Shown: positions 56,570 to 63,490 of the stretch, in pieces
Position numbering within the stretch: the stretch's first letter is position 1
Layout: the number at the start of each line of letters is the position of its first letter
Assembly: GCF_000150275.1 (NCBI RefSeq)
Contig: NW_002060946.1
Coordinates: 677,562 to 741,561, forward strand
DNA length: 64,000 nt
Direction: 5' to 3'
Source: Trichoplax adhaerens
Lineage: Eukaryota; Animalia; Placozoa
Translations under genes and position numbers: made by a program
The notes under the pieces: model-generated
The model's input: the letters and a program-made list of their open reading frames with translations, nothing else
Databases searched by the model: none
Told to the model about the DNA's origin: nothing

Positions 56570-57708
56570 ATGGTTCTTGATGGTGAATATTATGCCGCTA
56601 CAACTATTGTAGTGACTACTCTAATCATTTATTATGGTCGTGACTTGCACTTAAAAACTTTGAGCCACTGTCAGTATCTTCCAACTGTATTTGCTATAAT
56701 ATTTAGTTGGCATCGTGGCACTCTGCAATCTTTATTACATCGAGCTCTTTTATTAAATCAAAGCTATCAGGTACACAGTACACAGCTTAAGTTAACTTCA
56801 CTGGTTTTTTAAAAATAGTTTTAATTATGATATTCTACATAAATTATGGCGTAATCGCTTGTTTTATAGTCATTAGAGATCATAATAGGTACAGCCTTAG
56901 TAATCCTTATTATGTAGCATTCTGCTGTTTCATAAAGCATATCCAAACTATTGCTATGTCGATTTAAGAATCGATAACGTATTAACAATTAAGCGTTTAC
57001 ATAACATAAAATTTTTTGTTGTGATTTCTTAACTTAAATAGAAAAAGCTGATAAGAAAGATATTCCATATAACTGAACTATATTAAATTTGGGGTTGATT
57101 GTTTTAATAAGGTTATCGGGCTTCATATAATGCAAGGGATTACGATAGCTGCAGCTTCCATTGGACTAGTAGCAATGCTAGATGTCTTTTTGGGCTGGGG
57201 TATCATTAAGCAAAGTAAAAACTCAAACACTATTTTTGGACCAAACACAATTTCGAATTATGGCATCTTTAGTTTATTGAGAGCTTTTGGAGAAGAATTT
57301 GGTTGGCGCTGCTATCTCATGCCGATACTTTTGGCAAAATACAACGTCATGGAAACATTATTTATTAGTGGTATCATCTGGGCATTATTTCATATTCCAA
57401 TTATGATATTACTAACTGCTAGATATGAAGTTGAAAGACCGTTGTATACCTGGGTGCTGCAAGGCTTATCTGTATTTCTTGACGCTTATGTATTTGGTTG
57501 GTTATCAATCCAGACAAATTACTCCCTATGGGCTGCAGGATCATTTCATGCTGCATGGAATTTCATTAATCCAATTGTGTTGGGTAGCGTATATACAAAT
57601 ACAGATGGCATTATTAAAGGAGAACTATGGAAAATTAACGGTGAAGGCTTAGCTGGTTGTATTGTTAGTCTTATGATGATTTATTTAATACAGTTAAATA
57701 TATCTTAG
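56570..57708 (+). CDS. CPBP/Abi-family (type II CAAX protease-like) intramembrane glutamic protease, 2 exons
   Basis: Exons 56570-56770 and 57112-57708 join in phase 0. All three family motifs are present: GEEFGWR (EExxxR), WALFH (FxxxH) and HAAWN (HxxxN). Multiple hydrophobic segments. Confidence 0.85.
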
Positions 57709-58828
57709 CTCTTGTAGTTATTTTTTAAAAGTCATTTATAGAAAGTAATTACATTTTAAAAATAATTAATTTCATTAGAGCCAGTTACTTTTATCTTCGT
57801 TTATATGTTGCTAAGAGTAAGTATCTATAAATGTATCATTGCATACAACTTGCATAAATGCTAATATTGATACTGTATCATTTTCAATCTGACTGACCAC
57901 ACGTTGGCTGAATACCACCTAATAGCTCTACTAGCATTACATTGAGAGTAAATAGATAATTTACAAATAAAAGTGCAGTATCTGTTTCTTTAAGTTCTTC
58001 GATCTTGCGAAAGAGCTACTGAGGATTAGATAAGCTAAATCGGTAGGAAAAATGTTGAAGTTCCATTTCGCAAAATCTTTTCACTCTTTTGCCAATATCC
58101 GTATCCGTATTCATTCTCACAAATCAATTAATAAATTTTTAACCTAGATGTATTACAAATTAATTCGTAAGTTGTACACACTCTTAGACCTGGTTTTTGC
58201 AAGTTTCTACAGAACAGTCATGACAGTAAAATGACGGAGTTTATTTATGATCTCAAAATCTTTAACTTTTTCTCACTATCAAATTTTATTATTAAATTCT
58301 TCTGACCAATAACTGCTATAAAAGTCTTCATACATGTGTTACTCTAATATGCTTTTCAATACGTAGAAATATAATCGGTATAATTTAATGCCTACACAAA
58401 ATGTACATTTCTATTACAGAAAGTAATAATTCTTTCTATGTACGCATATAGAGGATTCAGTGTAGTAGCCCACAGGTAGACTGATGATGGCATTCTACTT
58501 TATAAGAATACTGGCGCTACTATTAGGGAGGCTTTGGGGAATATGCAAAGAAAGCTTACCTTGTTCTATTTATTAGCGTTATAATGATATTGATATTTAA
58601 TTCAATTAAACTTAACTTAAACTTTTGTACAAAGTTTGCAAATAAGTTTATTGAAAGCAAATTTAGTTTTCAAATCAATTCAGTTAATAAGAATCAATCA
58701 TTTCCCGTTTTATCGTCCTAGTATACTGGTATATCCCTTACTAAAAGGAGATATTTCAAAATATACAACCAAATAGAGATTATATCAGTGATAATTTTAG
58801 TTTTTTAATTACAGCTAGTATAATAACA

Positions 58829-61112
58829 TTAATACAAGTTGATGGTAGGTTGCATAATAGTATCAGTAGTAAAGATTCCTAATTGTGCCATTTCTGTTTT
58901 TAACTTCGTCATCATATCACCTGAAAGTTCCTGTAATGGAGAGCGTGGAATACCAATGTCTAATCCCCGCAAGGTCAACATTGCTTTATGAACAGTAACC
59001 TCATTACCTGCCAACGTAATAAATCAAAATTGATAATCAAATATCATTCCTCTAATATTTCTGGATATATTCTTAAAATATATTTGATAATTGAGGTGTT
59101 GTACGCACTGTATGAACCTAATTTTCTGTGTACAGCGTTAACAATGCCCTATTAATAAGAGAAATTGAAATTGTCAGGGCAAAAATCTAATAAAACAAAG
59201 TAATCTGCCAACTCCAAAGTAGTAACTCACCGACGACATGAAATACCTTACTTGATTAATTATATACTAAAAAGACTTTGATAAATTAAAATAGCATATC
59301 TTACTTGTAGCCGTCGAGCTTCGTGTATATTACCAAGTTTAAAGCAATCAATGATACCATTGTATAATTTTCCTAAATAACCATATACGCTAGAATAATT
59401 TATCGACAATACAAAAAAGCAATTAAAATTTTACGATCATTTAAAACGACATATGAAATTTCACGCCTTAATAAAATAATTTTAATCTGTAATATTTACT
59501 GGCTTTGAAAGATCGTACACCCGACCGCAAGACCTCCTAAAAATTGCTAAAACAAAGAGTACTCGTAAGATTGTAATTTATTTGCAAATTAAAAAAATGA
59601 AACTTAAATGTACCACGAATCTTAAAGTATATTTGAGGCTTAATATTACTTAAGAAACTTCAGTTGTGTACCTCTTCTCTCCCCATGATCATGAAATAAT
59701 TTTTCGAATGAACACTCGAGGTTTTACATAGGCCGTAGTCACACAAATTATAACCATTGTATTGCGTACCACAGAACGTTGGAACATCAAATGCAATACA
59801 GTTCAAAATTTCTTCAAGATTTAGAACAGAAACTACAAATATTCGTTAGTGGTTGCTCGTAACAGTACGTACTATGCCATAAACTAAAGGTTAAATCAAT
59901 TGAATACAAAAATATTTCTCTATAACACATACATGGTTCTGTACTGGATGTAATAATAGTTTCTTCAGAGTGATTATATAAGAGAGGTATATTAGGAGCA
60001 TCGCGAGAAATATTAGACAAGTAATTTGTTAAGGTTGCTAAAGAAAACAATGAAAAAGAAAGTAAACTTTAGTACCAATGCGATAGTGACACAGGAAAGG
60101 ATTTCATGCTAACTAGTGATTGTCACTTGGAGATTTTTTAATGCCCAAGCTCCCTAAGTATCGGTAGTAACTTAAACATAGAATCAAAATTCATCTGCGA
60201 TATATCTTACCTATTCTAGTTTTATATCCATAACTTGGACAAGTACAACTAATAGCTGAAACACCAACGGATTGTGCAAAGCGTGCCTAACAAAAGTATC
60301 AGGAATAAAAAACACCATAGCGTAAGTTAAATTAATAAAATCTTTCTACCACTTTTACTCGTATAGAACGCATGCGTTAAAAATAAAAAAAGAATCGAGT
60401 GACTACCAGTTCAGTTGCTGCGTTGAGACAATCGCAACTAACGTTACAGATGATTCCCTGAAGTCTACATAAGCAAGTTTTATTATAATAAATTCAATTA
60501 CCAATAATACAATTATTGCAAATGTAAGTTTAATTGTACGAAATTTACAGTAAACATACTTTCCCTGAGATGCTCTAGCCCATTCTTGTACTATGGCTTT
60601 CCTTTCGTCGATCGTTAATGATTTATATTCACCAGCATCACTACATACTGTTGGTTGGTTAGCAATTAGGAGTAACACCCATATTAATCAATATTAACAG
60701 AAATAAGTGCGATAAAGATAGATGAAGTAGAGCTTTAGCTTTCATAATATTAAACTTACTGTGACAAATCGTAATACCATCGCTGAGTAACAAATTAATA
60801 TATTGTGGAATTAAGGTTAAATTGAGTTCTCTGCTCGTATAAATATTTTTATTAGTTATAATAAATGTTAATGTTGTATTGTTGAAATTAAATGATGAGA
60901 TTAATCTTAGTGATTTAGACTATAGGAATAATTTAAGAGCAACTTAAGGACCACCTTGCCTATTAGCTATAGTGAACATGACATCACCATATTGTATTCA
61001 AAAGAATGTAGGTAATAAATGAGCTAATAGAGTAAACTAACCCGTTACGATGAAAAGGAGTCAATACGTCAGCTATTAAACCTTCTACCATAAATTGTTT
61101 AGGTGTCGTAAT
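58829..61112 (-). CDS. N-acetylneuraminate lyase/DHDPS-family TIM-barrel domain with degenerate active site, multi-exon
   Basis: Collinear with animal NPL: GLIADVLTPFHRNG / ICSDAGEYKSLTIDERK...W / ARFAQSVGVSAI / VPTFCGTQYNGYNLCDYGLC / YGYLGK / KAMLTLRGLDIGIPRSPL. Confidence 0.85.
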
Positions 61113-61369
61113 CTAGATTTTAATAACAATATCGAATGGTGCAAAATTAATTGATTAATATTTTTTCTAAATCTTTAGCAGAAACTAAGGCGAAAATTTT
61201 GATTGAAATAGTTGAGATGTATTGCTAATTGTACCATAATTATAATTACTGTAGTTATGAAAATTATCCAATGTTACTATGGAAAAAGATAGATGATATC
61301 TATAATTAATAATACTACAAAGTTATGCAGCACAACATGCTGAATGGAGGTATTTTTCGTATAACTTAC

Positions 61370-62589
61370 AGGTGATACTTTCATGCCGTCATTTAATTCA
61401 CCTTGGATGACAGGTCGAAATACTTTACTGGTTAAACGTTTGACACCTGATGAAGAAGCTCTTGATCGATTTTGACTAGCATTCGTTTTCTTAGCTCCAG
61501 TAATGGTAATAGTAGTAGTAGCCTTGCTGGTGGAATCATTCTGATCATTTTGCAATTTCCTCACCAATAGCTTTTCATAAGGTTTTCTAGTAATACAGTA
61601 TATACATATATTCTGAAATCTCTTAGCGATCGTAAAAATTATTTGCAAATTAATTTTATTGTAGCACCTCCACATCGCCTAACTTTTGTATTATACTGTA
61701 CGAATTGCAATCACAATGATGGTTACTATGATTGTGTTACCTAATCATTTTAAAGCTTTAGCTGGCTAGTAACTGTTAGCAAAATGAGTAATAATTACTG
61801 CAGTAAGTACTAATTAATCGATGCAATTGTAAAGTAATACAGTAGTTGGTAGAAGAGTGCAGCAGGCATTTGTAATGTATTCCTTGACATTCGACGAACT
61901 TGTTGAGCAGATGAGGACAGTAGCATATGATTTATAAGCCCATAGTACTGACAGTATTATAGGGTAAGGATATCTATCACTGTTAAAGGTACAAACTGGA
62001 AGCTGATGATTGCCATATTTTGTTATGCAGATACTGTGTTAGAAACATGTAGACTATGACGTCAAGTGTAAACACCATTTTAAACCTTGCGTGTATGACG
62101 TTAGGCAATAAATATGATATGACATCAAAAGATGGTACAGCAAGATTCCTAATGCGATCAACTTGTATAGGAATTTATCGTCTTATCGTTGATGATTGAC
62201 TGTTAATTCAAAGATTTTTGTACCTATTTGAAGTTTTGATACTAGAAAGCGACATCTTTGTGAAGAAACTGAGCAGCACTGCAAGAGTAGTACGATAGAA
62301 AAATGGATCATCCATATACTGTAGACGTCTACATGCTAATACTATTGATCGTTCTTATCGGTAGAATAACATTTTTGTACAGTAATCTCGTTTACCTGGT
62401 GCTATCAGTGATTGGGCCAGGTTTCTCACCACATTTGATCAGCTCTGCTTTGAGCTCAGCGTTGCTTAATTCAGTAAGACTTTTACGTTCACCATTGATA
62501 ACGTCAAACATAAGTGTGTTGATATCTACTGTAGCTTCCTTCCGTTTAGTCGTTGACTTTCTACTTCGTTTTAATGGTGGTGTAGCCAT
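61370..62589 (-). CDS. LEM-domain exons (basic NLS-like N-terminus, LEM, Ser/Thr-rich linker); predicted to splice onto the NPL-like exons
   Basis: Exon 62589-62396 plus exon 61586-61370 rebuild LTELSNAELKAELIKCGEKPGPITDSTR|KPYEKLLVRKL, which fits the LEM consensus. A GTAAGT donor lies at 61369. Confidence 0.8.
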
Positions 62590-63198
62590 TGCCAAACTTT
62601 GAACGAGTCAGTCAGTATACAGTTCAATACACTTCAAATATGTAGACTAGTTACCGTTCGAAAGTACGGTAGGCTCTTTTTCGGCTTTCTTTGACTTGCT
62701 AGAGCTGTTGTTATGAAATGTAAGATAGTTACAGAGGACTTCTTAATGCCAGGAATACTATTGTAACAACAGTGGCTATTTTTTTCAGCCTTTCCTTGAG
62801 TTGTTCCTGTTGACAAAGTCAGTGATTTGATACTGAGTCACACTGTAATCTTAGCTTGGCAGATTCTACAGTGATCCAGTCAGCACGACTATGTTGGTGA
62901 AATCTCTCCTTCTTAGGACACGGATTGGCGTAGAACTACTGTACGTATTCATTTTTCAGCATTAGGGTCAAAGGACAGATAAACGCATACAGTTTTAATT
63001 ATCAACTGAATTAGTTGTTTAGAAGAACGTCTAGTCTTGTTTTATGTTAAGTATGTTAGCTAAGCCAGTAAATTTCATGGCATAATTTTACGTTTTTATC
63101 ACTGAAATTCTTCACTTACCGCACCATCAAGTCCGCTGGAAAAATTGATTCAATGGCTGTCAATTTACCAATTATAATGTATTTAAATGATGCTTCAC

Positions 63199-63490
63199 GG
63201 TACAGTACAGTATGACATGAAGCGTTTCAATTGTTTTTGTGTCAAACGTACAGTACTGTAGCTCTAGTCAAACAACACAACAACCGATCGATGTTCACAC
63301 TGAGTACAGTACACTGAGTACAGTACACTGAGTACAGTACACTGAGTACAGTACAGAATTGTACTGTAGAGCATGAACTCCTATAAAGGATCTACAGTAC
63401 AGTACTGTACTGTACTGTACTGTACCGTACTGTACAGTACATACTGTACACTTCGCAACGATTTGCAAGTACATTTGTACAGTACAGTTC
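63199..63490. repeat. (GTACT/TACAG)n array including a 14-bp tandem repeat (acactgagtacagt x4, ~63297-63354)
   Basis: Seen directly; lies upstream of the LEM gene on the minus strand. Confidence 0.85.

What the first reader, a model, noticed from the sequence alone, without database searches (positions are those of the whole stretch)
58829..62589. Predicted LEM-domain / sialic-acid-aldolase (NPL-like) fusion protein
Seen: the second LEM exon ends at a consensus donor (CCT|GTAAGT, 61370/61369, phase 0). A 257-nt intron later, an acceptor (CTAG|ATT, 61113/61112, phase 0) opens the first NPL-like exon (ITTPKQFMVEGLIADVLTPF). No obvious separate promoter lies between them. The product would be a basic NLS-like segment (PPLKRSRKSTTKRK), LEM, a linker and a full DHDPS/NPL barrel. 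Known: LEM domains bind BAF/chromatin at the nuclear envelope, and NPL/DHDPS barrels typically tetramerise. I know of no LEM protein with this partner domain. Inference: a metabolic fold co-opted as an oligomerisation or metabolite-sensing module of a BAF-binding nuclear protein.
Basis: partly seen in the sequence, partly recalled or inferred. Interest (0 to 1): 0.85.

Follow-up and report, generated by a model that had tools for sequence, protein, structure and literature searches.

The report
LEM domain fused to dead sialate-lyase barrel
In the simple animal Trichoplax, one spliced mRNA really does join a chromatin-tethering LEM domain to a complete but catalytically dead copy of the sialic-acid-cleaving enzyme NPL; the combination is conserved in a second placozoan lineage and I found no paper on it.

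Summary
Observation confirmed. The GT..AG joint 61370>61112 (257-nt intron, phase 0 on both sides) is present in RNA contigs of three runs from three studies. In one run a single 1,871-nt contig runs from the 5'UTR through both LEM exons and all eleven NPL-like exons to the 3'UTR. The open frame is 463 codons, 62589..58829 on the minus strand.

The genome is Trichoplax adhaerens. Two public automatic models already carry LEM plus DHDPS: TRIADDRAFT_55200 (UniProt B3RU92, 336 aa) and a Trichoplax sp. H2 model (466 aa). Both are mis-spliced, and I found no paper on either.

A diverged placozoan metagenome contig (L007) keeps exons 2-13, every splice site and the phase-0 joint. dN/dS for the barrel is 0.13.

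The barrel best matches human NPL (E 1.4e-31; TM 0.85-0.87). It has Gln in place of the Schiff-base Lys and SDAGE in place of the usual G-T/S-T/S-G-E motif, so it is a pseudoenzyme. A homodimer prediction passed, 0.47 against a best control of 0.02.

Best reading: a soluble nuclear BAF-binding LEM protein made multivalent by a dead aldolase barrel. Its function is inferred, not shown.

The parts
63120..63145 (-). 3' end of an upstream non-coding leader exon (its start was not determined), spliced to exon 1
   Evidence: Joint 62938/63120 (skips 181, GT..AG) in X8 record 22, with 26 letters on the upstream side. The donor GTAAGT is visible.
62396..62938 (-). Exon 1. The 5'UTR is 62938-62590: 349 nt with no ATG, where about 6 are expected. 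The CDS is 62589-62396: the basic NLS-like stretch at 62580-62539 and the first helix and loop of the LEM domain from 62478.
   Evidence: There is an in-frame TGA at 62610 upstream of the ATG.
61370..61586 (-). Exon 2. It holds the second LEM helix (61586-61562), then a Ser/Thr/Lys-rich disordered linker with a short conserved motif (KRLT.KVFRPV.Q.ELN), and ends at a phase-0 donor.
   Evidence: The LEM helix and the motif are conserved in L007. The linker has pLDDT below 50.
61113..61369 (-). The 257-nt intron that joins the LEM part to the NPL part. Read-through would add 30 residues with a hydrophobic tail and then a stop.
   Evidence: It is spliced out in X5, X7 and X8, with zero depth at 61139-61305. 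The tail is not conserved: L007 reads 7 codons and then a stop. Its hydrophobicity is ordinary for intron frames here, 3 of 23 as high.
61042..61112 (-). Exon 3, the N-terminus and first strand of the NPL-like barrel. It contains the internal ATG at 61091.
   Evidence: L007 has the same 71-nt length, phase and splice sites.
60760..60830 (-). Exon 4
60560..60647 (-). Exon 5. The degenerate substrate-carboxylate motif (C-S-D-A-G-E at 60645-60628) lies where most aligned family members have G-(T/S)-(T/S)-G-E.
60407..60464 (-). Exon 6
   Evidence: joint read with the cut shifted by 1 to GT..AG
60211..60286 (-). Exon 7
59933..60037 (-). Exon 8, with the strand that carries the family's catalytic Tyr (P-L-L-Y-N-H here)
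   Evidence: The alignment of the Tyr is ambiguous.
59672..59832 (-). Exon 9. Codon CAA (Gln) at 59764-59762 sits where the family has its Schiff-base Lys. The exon also holds the start of the predicted dimer interface.
   Evidence: (Lys in all 12 other aligned family members and in human NPL)
59500..59546 (-). Exon 10
59305..59389 (-). Exon 11
59109..59148 (-). Exon 12
58707..59007 (-). Exon 13: the C-terminal helices, the stop at 58831-58829 and a 3'UTR running to about 58707
   Evidence: 100% identical to the C-terminus of TRIADDRAFT_55200

Best explanation
This is one 13-exon Trichoplax gene, plus a 5' leader exon, that encodes a 463-residue soluble protein.

SHOWN. It codes in order for a basic NLS-like stretch, a canonical LEM helix-loop-helix, a disordered linker of about 60 residues, and a full-length barrel of the N-acetylneuraminate lyase (NPL/DHDPS) fold. 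The barrel has Gln instead of the Schiff-base Lys and a degenerate carboxylate-binding motif. It evolves under strong purifying selection. The same fused gene structure exists in a diverged placozoan.

INFERRED. The gene arose when an N-terminal LEM gene lost its own 3' end and spliced into the very start of the ancestral animal NPL gene. The LEM domain binds the dimeric chromatin protein BAF, which Trichoplax encodes. The dead barrel keeps the family's self-association (dimer or tetramer). One particle would then present two to four LEM domains and cross-link BAF-coated chromatin in the nucleoplasm. This is analogous to soluble LAP2-alpha rather than to membrane-anchored emerin.
For: Splicing. 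The joint 61112/61370 and the 11 other joints appear in contigs of X5, X7 and X8, three studies. X5 record 10 (1,871 nt, depth 80.9) covers exon 1 through exon 13 without a branch. The X7 and X8 contigs pass from exon 2 through all 71 nt of exon 3. The frame is open for 463 codons. The 349-nt 5'UTR holds no ATG.

Domains. LEM scores 47.9 bits and DHDPS 66.9 bits on P0004. The LAP2 LEM domain 1H9F is matched. The AF2 model has LEM pLDDT about 87, linker below 50 and barrel about 85-90. Foldseek's best match is human NAL 6ARH, TM 0.85-0.87. phmmer gives E 1.4e-31 to 6ARH.

Dead site. Gln sits opposite Lys of human NPL and opposite Lys in all 12 other aligned family members. The motif is SDAGE instead of G-T/S-T/S-G-E. 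Both changes are also present in L007.

Conservation. L007 has exons 2-13 collinear, with identical exon lengths for exons 3-13. All AG and GT sites and the phase-0 donor and acceptor are kept. dN/dS is 0.13 with dS about 1. The convergent neighbouring gene is also conserved, so the locus is orthologous.

No retrocopy or paralogue was found in the genome. BAF is present as an intronless 90-aa ORF scoring 145 bits.

Self-association. Complex prediction on residues 166-466 of P0004 in two copies scored 0.47, with a best control of 0.02. The runs agree in at least 97% of contacts and the partner's pLDDT is at least 71. The mark was reached by 21 of 30 solved homodimers and 0 of 23 solved single chains. 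Of the interface residues that can be mapped, 24 of 26 are identical in L007, against 77% elsewhere.

There is no transmembrane segment in the RNA-supported frame. A separate membrane-type LEM gene exists elsewhere in the genome (L002).
Against: All RNA evidence is from assembled contigs, not raw reads. Starts, ends and isoform ratios are therefore unknown. A minor transcript starting inside exon 3 and using ATG 61091 cannot be excluded.

X5 and X7 are only guessed to be RNA, although their 12 spliced joints say that they are.

L007 lacks exon 1, so only the second LEM helix is seen in the second lineage.

BAF binding was not tested. The dimer pass may reflect the model's memory of solved NAL oligomers. 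It also used a public model that lacks exon 3 and three residues of exon 12.

The family's catalytic Tyr may still be present.

Introns 3 and 6 are partly retained in X7 and X8. Retention of intron 3 would truncate the protein.
Confidence: 0.7

Rival explanations
1. These are two separate genes. One is a small emerin-like, tail-anchored LEM protein made by reading through the donor at 61370: 167 aa, ending in a hydrophobic tail. The other is an independent NPL-like protein started at ATG 61091. The joined RNA would be a minor read-through chimera.
For: Read-through adds 30 residues with a hydrophobic stretch before a stop. ATG 61091 lies two residues before the conserved first strand, where stand-alone NPLs start (own knowledge). 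An ATTAAA lies at 61124.
Against: There is no RNA depth in 61139-61305 in X5, X7 or X8, and no contig branch at 61112. In L007 read-through gives 7 codons and then a stop, with no hydrophobic tail. Three of 23 open intron frames of this gene are at least as hydrophobic. The donor, the acceptor and both phases are conserved. The Met is not at the same position in L007.
Confidence: 0.05
2. The fusion is real, but the barrel's main role is ligand binding rather than multivalency. In this reading a dead aldolase pocket senses a small molecule, such as a sugar acid or keto acid, and couples it to BAF or chromatin tethering.
For: The barrel is under strong purifying selection throughout, not only at the predicted interface, with 77% identity elsewhere. 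The pocket residues are changed rather than deleted, Thr-Thr to Asp-Ala and Lys to Gln, and the same changes are kept in both lineages.
Against: No ligand evidence of any kind. The residues that hold the substrate carboxylate in the family are lost. No sialic-acid pathway genes were detected in the genome, although that search is insensitive.
Confidence: 0.15
3. The barrel is still an enzyme. It would use another mechanism or another nucleophile, and the LEM domain would deliver it to chromatin, as the GIY-YIG nuclease is delivered in ANKLE1.
For: The fold is intact with high model confidence. A Tyr is retained at or next to the catalytic Tyr position. ANKLE1 is a precedent for a LEM domain fused to an enzyme (PMC3810338).
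Against: Class I aldolases of this family need the Schiff-base Lys. It is Gln here and in L007, and no Lys lies nearby in that strand. The carboxylate-binding motif is lost too.
Confidence: 0.05
4. This is a non-functional conjoined transcript: a decaying NPL gene captured by the upstream gene's splicing.
For: Catalytic residues are lost. Two introns are partly retained in RNA contigs.
Against: dN/dS is 0.13 with dS about 1. The frame is open, and all 11 exon lengths and all splice sites are kept in a diverged lineage.
Confidence: 0.03

Closest known systems
LAP2-alpha (soluble isoform of TMPO/LAP2)
   Same: It is a LEM-domain protein without a membrane anchor. The LEM domain is N-terminal and is followed by a linker and a self-associating C-terminal domain. 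It acts with BAF in the nucleoplasm (PMC3810338 for solubility and co-localisation with BAF; self-association is from my own knowledge).
   Different: The C-terminal domain is unrelated, and LAP2-alpha is restricted to vertebrates. LAP2 also has a second, LEM-like domain. Here the C-terminal module is a whole dead NPL barrel.
ANKLE1 / LEM-3 (LEM + GIY-YIG nuclease)
   Same: It is the known case of a soluble LEM protein fused to an enzyme fold. BAF binding through LEM supports its function (PMC3810338). Trichoplax has its own ankyrin-plus-LEM gene (L004).
   Different: ANKLE1's enzyme domain is active and acts on DNA. The barrel here is a sugar-acid aldolase fold without its catalytic lysine.
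Animal N-acetylneuraminate pyruvate lyase (NPL; human structure 6ARH)
   Same: It is the best sequence match (E 1.4e-31) and the best fold match (TM 0.85-0.87, 26% identity). The match is full length, from the first strand to the C-terminal helices.
   Different: The Schiff-base Lys is Gln, and T-T of the GTTGE motif is D-A. By my numbering of human NPL, Ser175, Asp201 and Ser218 are also changed. An N-terminal LEM extension of 137 residues is added.
Emerin / Otefin-type membrane LEM proteins
   Same: They have an N-terminal LEM domain of canonical sequence (G-P-I..S-T-R..Y-E-K).
   Different: They are tail-anchored in the inner nuclear membrane. The RNA-supported frame here has no transmembrane segment. 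Trichoplax has a separate LEM gene with a hydrophobic segment (L002).

Membership tests
LEM-domain proteins (Pfam PF03020) | Match to the LEM profile above the curated cut-off | tested here: met
   47.9 bits (P0004) and 48.7 bits (P0001) against a cut-off of 24. Exon 1 alone scores 34.7 bits.
LEM-domain proteins (Pfam PF03020) | Helix-loop-helix fold of about 40 residues | tested here: met
   The AF2 model has helices at 43-52 and 62-81 with pLDDT about 87. It aligns to the LAP2 LEM structures 1H9F and 1GJJ.
LEM-domain proteins (Pfam PF03020) | Direct binding to BAF | not tested
   Trichoplax BAF exists (L014:1498-1767, 145 bits).
Membrane-anchored LEM proteins (emerin, LAP2-beta, MAN1/LEM2) | Transmembrane segment(s) | tested here: not met
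   There is no hydrophobic segment in the RNA-supported 463-codon frame. The only candidate is the read-through tail, which is spliced out and not conserved.
DHDPS/NAL family (Pfam PF00701), as a fold | Profile match and a (beta/alpha)8 barrel with a C-terminal helical bundle | tested here: met
   DHDPS scores 66.9 bits against a cut-off of 22.1. Foldseek gives TM 0.85-0.89 to many NAL and DHDPS structures. The ESM Atlas structural hit has TM 0.79.
N-acetylneuraminate lyase, as an enzyme (class I aldolase) | Schiff-base lysine on strand 6 | tested here: not met
   Gln (codon 59764-59762) aligns with the Lys of human NPL and with Lys in 12 of 12 other family members. It is also Gln in L007.
N-acetylneuraminate lyase, as an enzyme (class I aldolase) | G-x-(S/T)-(S/T)-G-E carboxylate-binding motif | tested here: not met
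   C-S-D-A-G-E in Trichoplax and C-G-D-A-G-E in L007.
N-acetylneuraminate lyase, as an enzyme (class I aldolase) | Catalytic tyrosine on strand 5 | tested here: inconclusive
   MAFFT aligns the Tyr of L-L-Y-N-H with the family Tyr after a one-residue gap. HMMER against 6ARH puts Asn opposite the Tyr that precedes H-I-P.
N-acetylneuraminate lyase, as an enzyme (class I aldolase) | Homo-oligomer (tetramer of the family) | tested here: inconclusive
   The dimer prediction passed: 0.47 against a best control of 0.02, at least 97% contact agreement and partner pLDDT at least 71. The mark was reached by 21 of 30 solved homodimers and 0 of 23 single chains. This is a model result and may be from memory. 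A tetramer was not tested.

The most novel reading that the evidence does not exclude
The dead NPL barrel is a ligand-gated oligomerisation module. A small metabolite bound in the remodelled aldolase pocket would control how many LEM domains are presented to BAF. That would link metabolic state to chromatin tethering or post-mitotic nuclear assembly in one of the simplest animals. It would be an undescribed class of LEM protein, built by exon-level fusion of a whole enzyme gene.
Probability: 0.12. Interest if true: 0.85.

Novelty: new variant of a known kind. Interest (0 to 1): 0.6.

Why it matters
The seven human LEM-protein genes, emerin, LAP2, MAN1, LEM2, LEMD1, ANKLE1 and ANKLE2 (PMC3810338), pair the BAF-binding LEM domain with membrane anchors, winged-helix or RRM domains, ankyrin repeats or a nuclease. 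A whole metabolic-enzyme barrel stripped of its catalytic lysine is a partner I found in no paper.

It is a clean, transcript-supported example of a pseudoenzyme recruited to a nuclear-architecture protein by gene fusion, in a phylum near the base of the animal tree. It also gives a directly testable idea: multivalent presentation of LEM domains to BAF without a membrane, a role filled in vertebrates by the unrelated LAP2-alpha.

The report also corrects two mis-spliced public gene models. One of them is named 'N-acetylneuraminate lyase', an activity the protein almost certainly lacks.

Limits: the gene is known only from placozoans, and nothing about its function has been measured.

Tried and rejected
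1. Exon-by-exon Pfam scans of the NPL exons gave nothing, and one exon gave a weak PDB hit at E 0.064. The exons are too short for this. I then reached the public models through a 58-residue exon query.

Whole-protein analyses used the public models P0001 and P0004, neither of which equals the RNA-supported structure. P0001 lacks exons 9-12. P0004 replaces exon 3 by 30 residues of intron 3 and lacks three residues of exon 12.

I redid it from references.

4. My own first rival, an emerin-like tail anchor by read-through, is rejected.

5. Word-based homologue searches with P0001, with P0004 residues 160-466 and with an alignment found no other protein carrying LEM plus DHDPS. They found only 14 family members, so they say little about other phyla.

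6. Two scans of JGI metagenome contigs, one with the protein and one with a conserved exon-9 DNA pattern, found nothing.

7. The ESM Atlas search by features gave no usable hit.

8. Searches of the own genome for a canonical NPL paralogue found only an intronless bacterial-type DHDPS on the small contig C885. The profile search also missed this very gene, so absence of a paralogue is not shown.

9. GT29 sialyltransferase and NeuB gave no hits. CTP_transf_3 hit only an intronless ORF on the small contig C925. These searches are insensitive and are not evidence of absence.

10. X4 showed no joints and covers introns. It behaves like DNA and was not used as RNA evidence.

Full report
WHAT IS THERE

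On the minus strand the window holds an ATG at 62589. It is preceded by an in-frame TGA at 62610. A 194-nt coding stretch follows and ends at a GTAAAC donor at 62396/62395. A second exon, 61586-61370, ends CCT|GTAAGT in phase 0. After 257 nt, an acceptor TAG|ATT opens an exon at 61112, also in phase 0. Exon 1 alone matches Pfam LEM at 34.7 bits against a cut-off of 24.

IS THE JUNCTION USED?

The look-up of sequencing runs listed 20 runs that hold part of the stretch. I laid four of them on window:58300-63300.

- Three runs, X5, X7 and X8, come from three studies and carry two organism labels. X8 is on record as random-primed RNA-Seq.
- All three show the joint 61112/61370 ('skips 257', CT..AC on the + strand, which is GT..AG on the minus strand).
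- They also show the joint 61586/62396 and ten further joints through the NPL-like part.
- In X5 one contig of 1,871 nt (record 10, depth 80.9) runs 62939..62396 | 61586..61370 | ... | 59005..58707 without a branch.
- In X7 and X8 the contigs run from exon 1 through exon 2 and all 71 nt of exon 3. They stop at the next junction, where an intron-retaining variant forms a bubble.
- None of the three runs has any depth in 61139-61305.
- X4 shows no joints and covers introns. It behaves like DNA and I ignore it.

Some joints were reported with the cut shifted by 1-2 bases. After moving them to GT..AG, all 12 introns are canonical. The coding lengths, 411 + 981 nt, give one open frame of 463 codons ending at 58831-58829. 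The part of exon 1 upstream of the ATG is 349 nt and has no ATG at all, where about 6 are expected. That fits a real 5'UTR. X8 adds a further leader exon, with the joint 62938/63120.

The genome holds no intronless copy. The joined form is therefore RNA splicing and not a retrocopy.

Limits of this evidence: the data are contigs, not reads. They show presence and connectivity. They do not show transcript ends or isoform ratios.

WHOSE GENE, AND IS IT ALREADY KNOWN?

A 58-residue last-exon query against 1.84 billion representatives returned three proteins. The best one, P0001, is 100% identical to the query. It is TRIADDRAFT_55200 / XP_002111802.1 / UniProt B3RU92, 'LEM domain-containing protein' of Trichoplax adhaerens, 336 aa. 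A second model, P0004, is 466 aa. It comes from Trichoplax sp. H2 and is named 'N-acetylneuraminate lyase'. Both carry Pfam LEM and DHDPS.

So automatic annotation has already predicted the fusion twice. Neither model matches the RNA:

- P0001 skips part of exon 4 and all of exons 9-12.
- P0004 skips exon 3, reads 30 residues of intron 3 instead, and drops three residues of exon 12.

Full-text searches for the accessions, for LEM domain with Trichoplax or placozoa, and for an NPL pseudoenzyme found no paper.

Whole-protein analyses use P0001 and P0004, and exon pieces were searched by reference.

CONSERVATION

The second hit, P0002 (49 aa, 78% identical), lies on an ENA metagenome contig of 3,255 bp, L007.

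- L007 contains exons 2 to 13 in order. Exons 3-13 have exactly the same lengths as in Trichoplax, and every AG acceptor and GT donor is kept.
- Exon 2 again ends in phase 0, exon 3 again begins in phase 0 and is 71 nt long, and the intron between them is 216 nt.
- A convergent downstream gene is conserved as well, at 83% amino-acid identity, so the locus is orthologous.
- Summed exon by exon, the barrel has pS 0.56 and pN 0.12. That gives dS about 1.0, dN 0.13 and dN/dS 0.13, which is strong purifying selection.
- The second LEM helix is identical, and a short linker motif is conserved, while the rest of the linker varies with indels.
- L007 starts inside intron 1, so exon 1 is not seen there.

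THE RIVAL I RAISED MYSELF

Reading through the donor at 61370 would add 30 residues ending in a hydrophobic stretch. The result would be a 167-residue, emerin-like, tail-anchored protein. This fails for three reasons:

- There is no RNA depth in the intron.
- In L007 the read-through is 7 codons and then a stop.
- Three of 23 open frames in this gene's AT-rich introns are at least as hydrophobic.

The intron has no AATAAA and has one ATTAAA, at 61124. The Met at 61091 is not positionally conserved: the order is F-M-V-E in Trichoplax and F-V-M-E in L007.

THE TWO DOMAINS

LEM. The sequence is canonical, with the G-P-I..S-T-R..Y-E-K pattern. It aligns to the LAP2 LEM structures and folds as two helices with pLDDT about 87. 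The genome has four other LEM loci:

- one with a hydrophobic segment of membrane type (L002);
- one with ankyrin repeats, like ANKLE1 (L004);
- L003 and L006, which I did not classify.

It also has an intronless BAF gene. [quoted passage not shown] I take BAF binding as inferred and did not test it.

Barrel. phmmer gives human NPL (6ARH) as the best solved relative at E 1.4e-31, ahead of bacterial NALs at about 1e-21. The AF2 model built on a 14-sequence alignment has barrel pLDDT about 85-90 and a linker below 50. Foldseek puts 6ARH first, with TM 0.85-0.87.

Against 6ARH, and in a 14-sequence family alignment, the active-site positions read as follows:

- The Schiff-base Lys column is Gln in this protein and Lys in all 12 other members.
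- The carboxylate-binding motif G-T-T-G-E reads S-D-A-G-E.
- The catalytic Tyr is ambiguous. A Tyr is present, but the two alignments place it one position apart.
- By my own numbering of human NPL (from memory, so a lead only), Ser175, Asp201 and Ser218 are also replaced.

L007 has the same Gln and the same D-A. The barrel is therefore a conserved pseudoenzyme. This agrees with a separate first-stage note on the same stretch (s1-778845).

SELF-ASSOCIATION

- The score was 0.47 and the best of three controls was 0.02.
- The runs agree in at least 97% of contacts, and the partner's pLDDT is at least 71.
- The mark was reached by 21 of 30 proteins solved as homodimers and by 0 of 23 solved as single chains.
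- On eukaryotes the mark was reached by 17 of 29 homodimers.
- The tool warns that a pass for a family with solved oligomers may be from memory.

The symmetric interface uses residues 326-337, 351-362 and 385-405. Of the 26 interface residues that can be mapped to L007, 24 are identical and the other two are Arg/Lys and Glu/Asp. Elsewhere identity is 77%, so the enrichment is marginal. I read this as support for retained self-association, not proof.

HOW IT MOST LIKELY WORKS

Shown: one mRNA and one open frame, an intact LEM domain, a disordered linker, an intact but catalytically disabled NPL fold, purifying selection, and conservation of the fused structure across two placozoan lineages.

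Inferred:

- The basic N-terminus imports the protein into the nucleus.
- The LEM domain binds BAF dimers on chromatin.
- The barrel dimerises or tetramerises, so that each particle presents several LEM domains and bridges BAF-bound chromatin without a membrane. This makes it a functional analogue of LAP2-alpha.

Exon 3 begins at what corresponds to the very N-terminus of stand-alone NPLs. The likely origin is therefore an upstream LEM gene that lost its own 3' end and spliced into the first coding exon of the ancestral animal NPL gene.

Ligand sensing by the remodelled pocket is possible. It has no evidence.

VERDICT

The architecture is already present, uncharacterised and mis-modelled, in public databases, and I found no paper on it. 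I class it as a new variant of a known kind: a soluble LEM protein with a novel pseudoenzyme partner. Interest is moderate to high. It is limited by the narrow taxonomic range and by the absence of any functional measurement.

Noticed in passing
window 60831-61041 and 60287-60406: Introns 3 and 6 of this gene are represented by unspliced contigs in both X7 and X8 (records 14, 16, 20, 21), at roughly a third to a half of the depth of the spliced form. The other introns have none. This looks like selective intron retention. Retention of intron 3 would stop the frame 18 codons after exon 3. The Trichoplax sp. H2 public model reads part of this intron as coding.
   Followed up: partly
window 62590-62938 and 63120 upward: The 5'UTR is long. 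The 349 nt inside exon 1 are completely free of ATG, where about 6 are expected. A further spliced leader exon contains a short upstream ATG.
   Followed up: partly
window 63297-63355 and 63393-63449: Two tandem repeat arrays lie just upstream of the leader exon, in the presumed promoter region. One is 4.2 perfect copies of a 14-nt unit. The other is 11.6 copies of a 5-nt unit (TACTG).
   Followed up: no
window 61430-61380 (linker, exon 2): A short motif in the otherwise variable, disordered linker (K-R-L-T-x-K-V-F-R-P-V-x-Q-x-E-L-N) is conserved between Trichoplax and the diverged placozoan contig L007. It could be a docking motif.
   Followed up: no
window 57550-57711 (+ strand): This is the last exon of a convergent neighbouring gene. 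It is 83% identical at protein level to the end of L007, has no Pfam match, and its 3' end lies about 60 nt from the 3' end of the fusion gene (X5 record 9 ends at 58646).
   Followed up: partly
G000:C885:2090-2932 (L001/L015) and G000:C925:80-697: Intronless, bacterial-type DHDPS (E 1.2e-87) and CTP_transf_3 (E 3.4e-39) ORFs sit on very small contigs of the assembly. They are probably bacterial (symbiont or contaminant) DNA and not Trichoplax genes.
   Followed up: no
L014:1498-1767 (G000:C1403): The Trichoplax BAF gene is a single intronless 90-codon ORF in a genome where most genes are intron-rich.
   Followed up: no
L002:1489-2310 (G000:C1410): A single long exon encodes an N-terminal LEM domain, a disordered Ser/Thr-rich region and a hydrophobic segment. 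It is a candidate for the emerin- or LAP2-beta-type membrane LEM protein of Trichoplax.
   Followed up: partly
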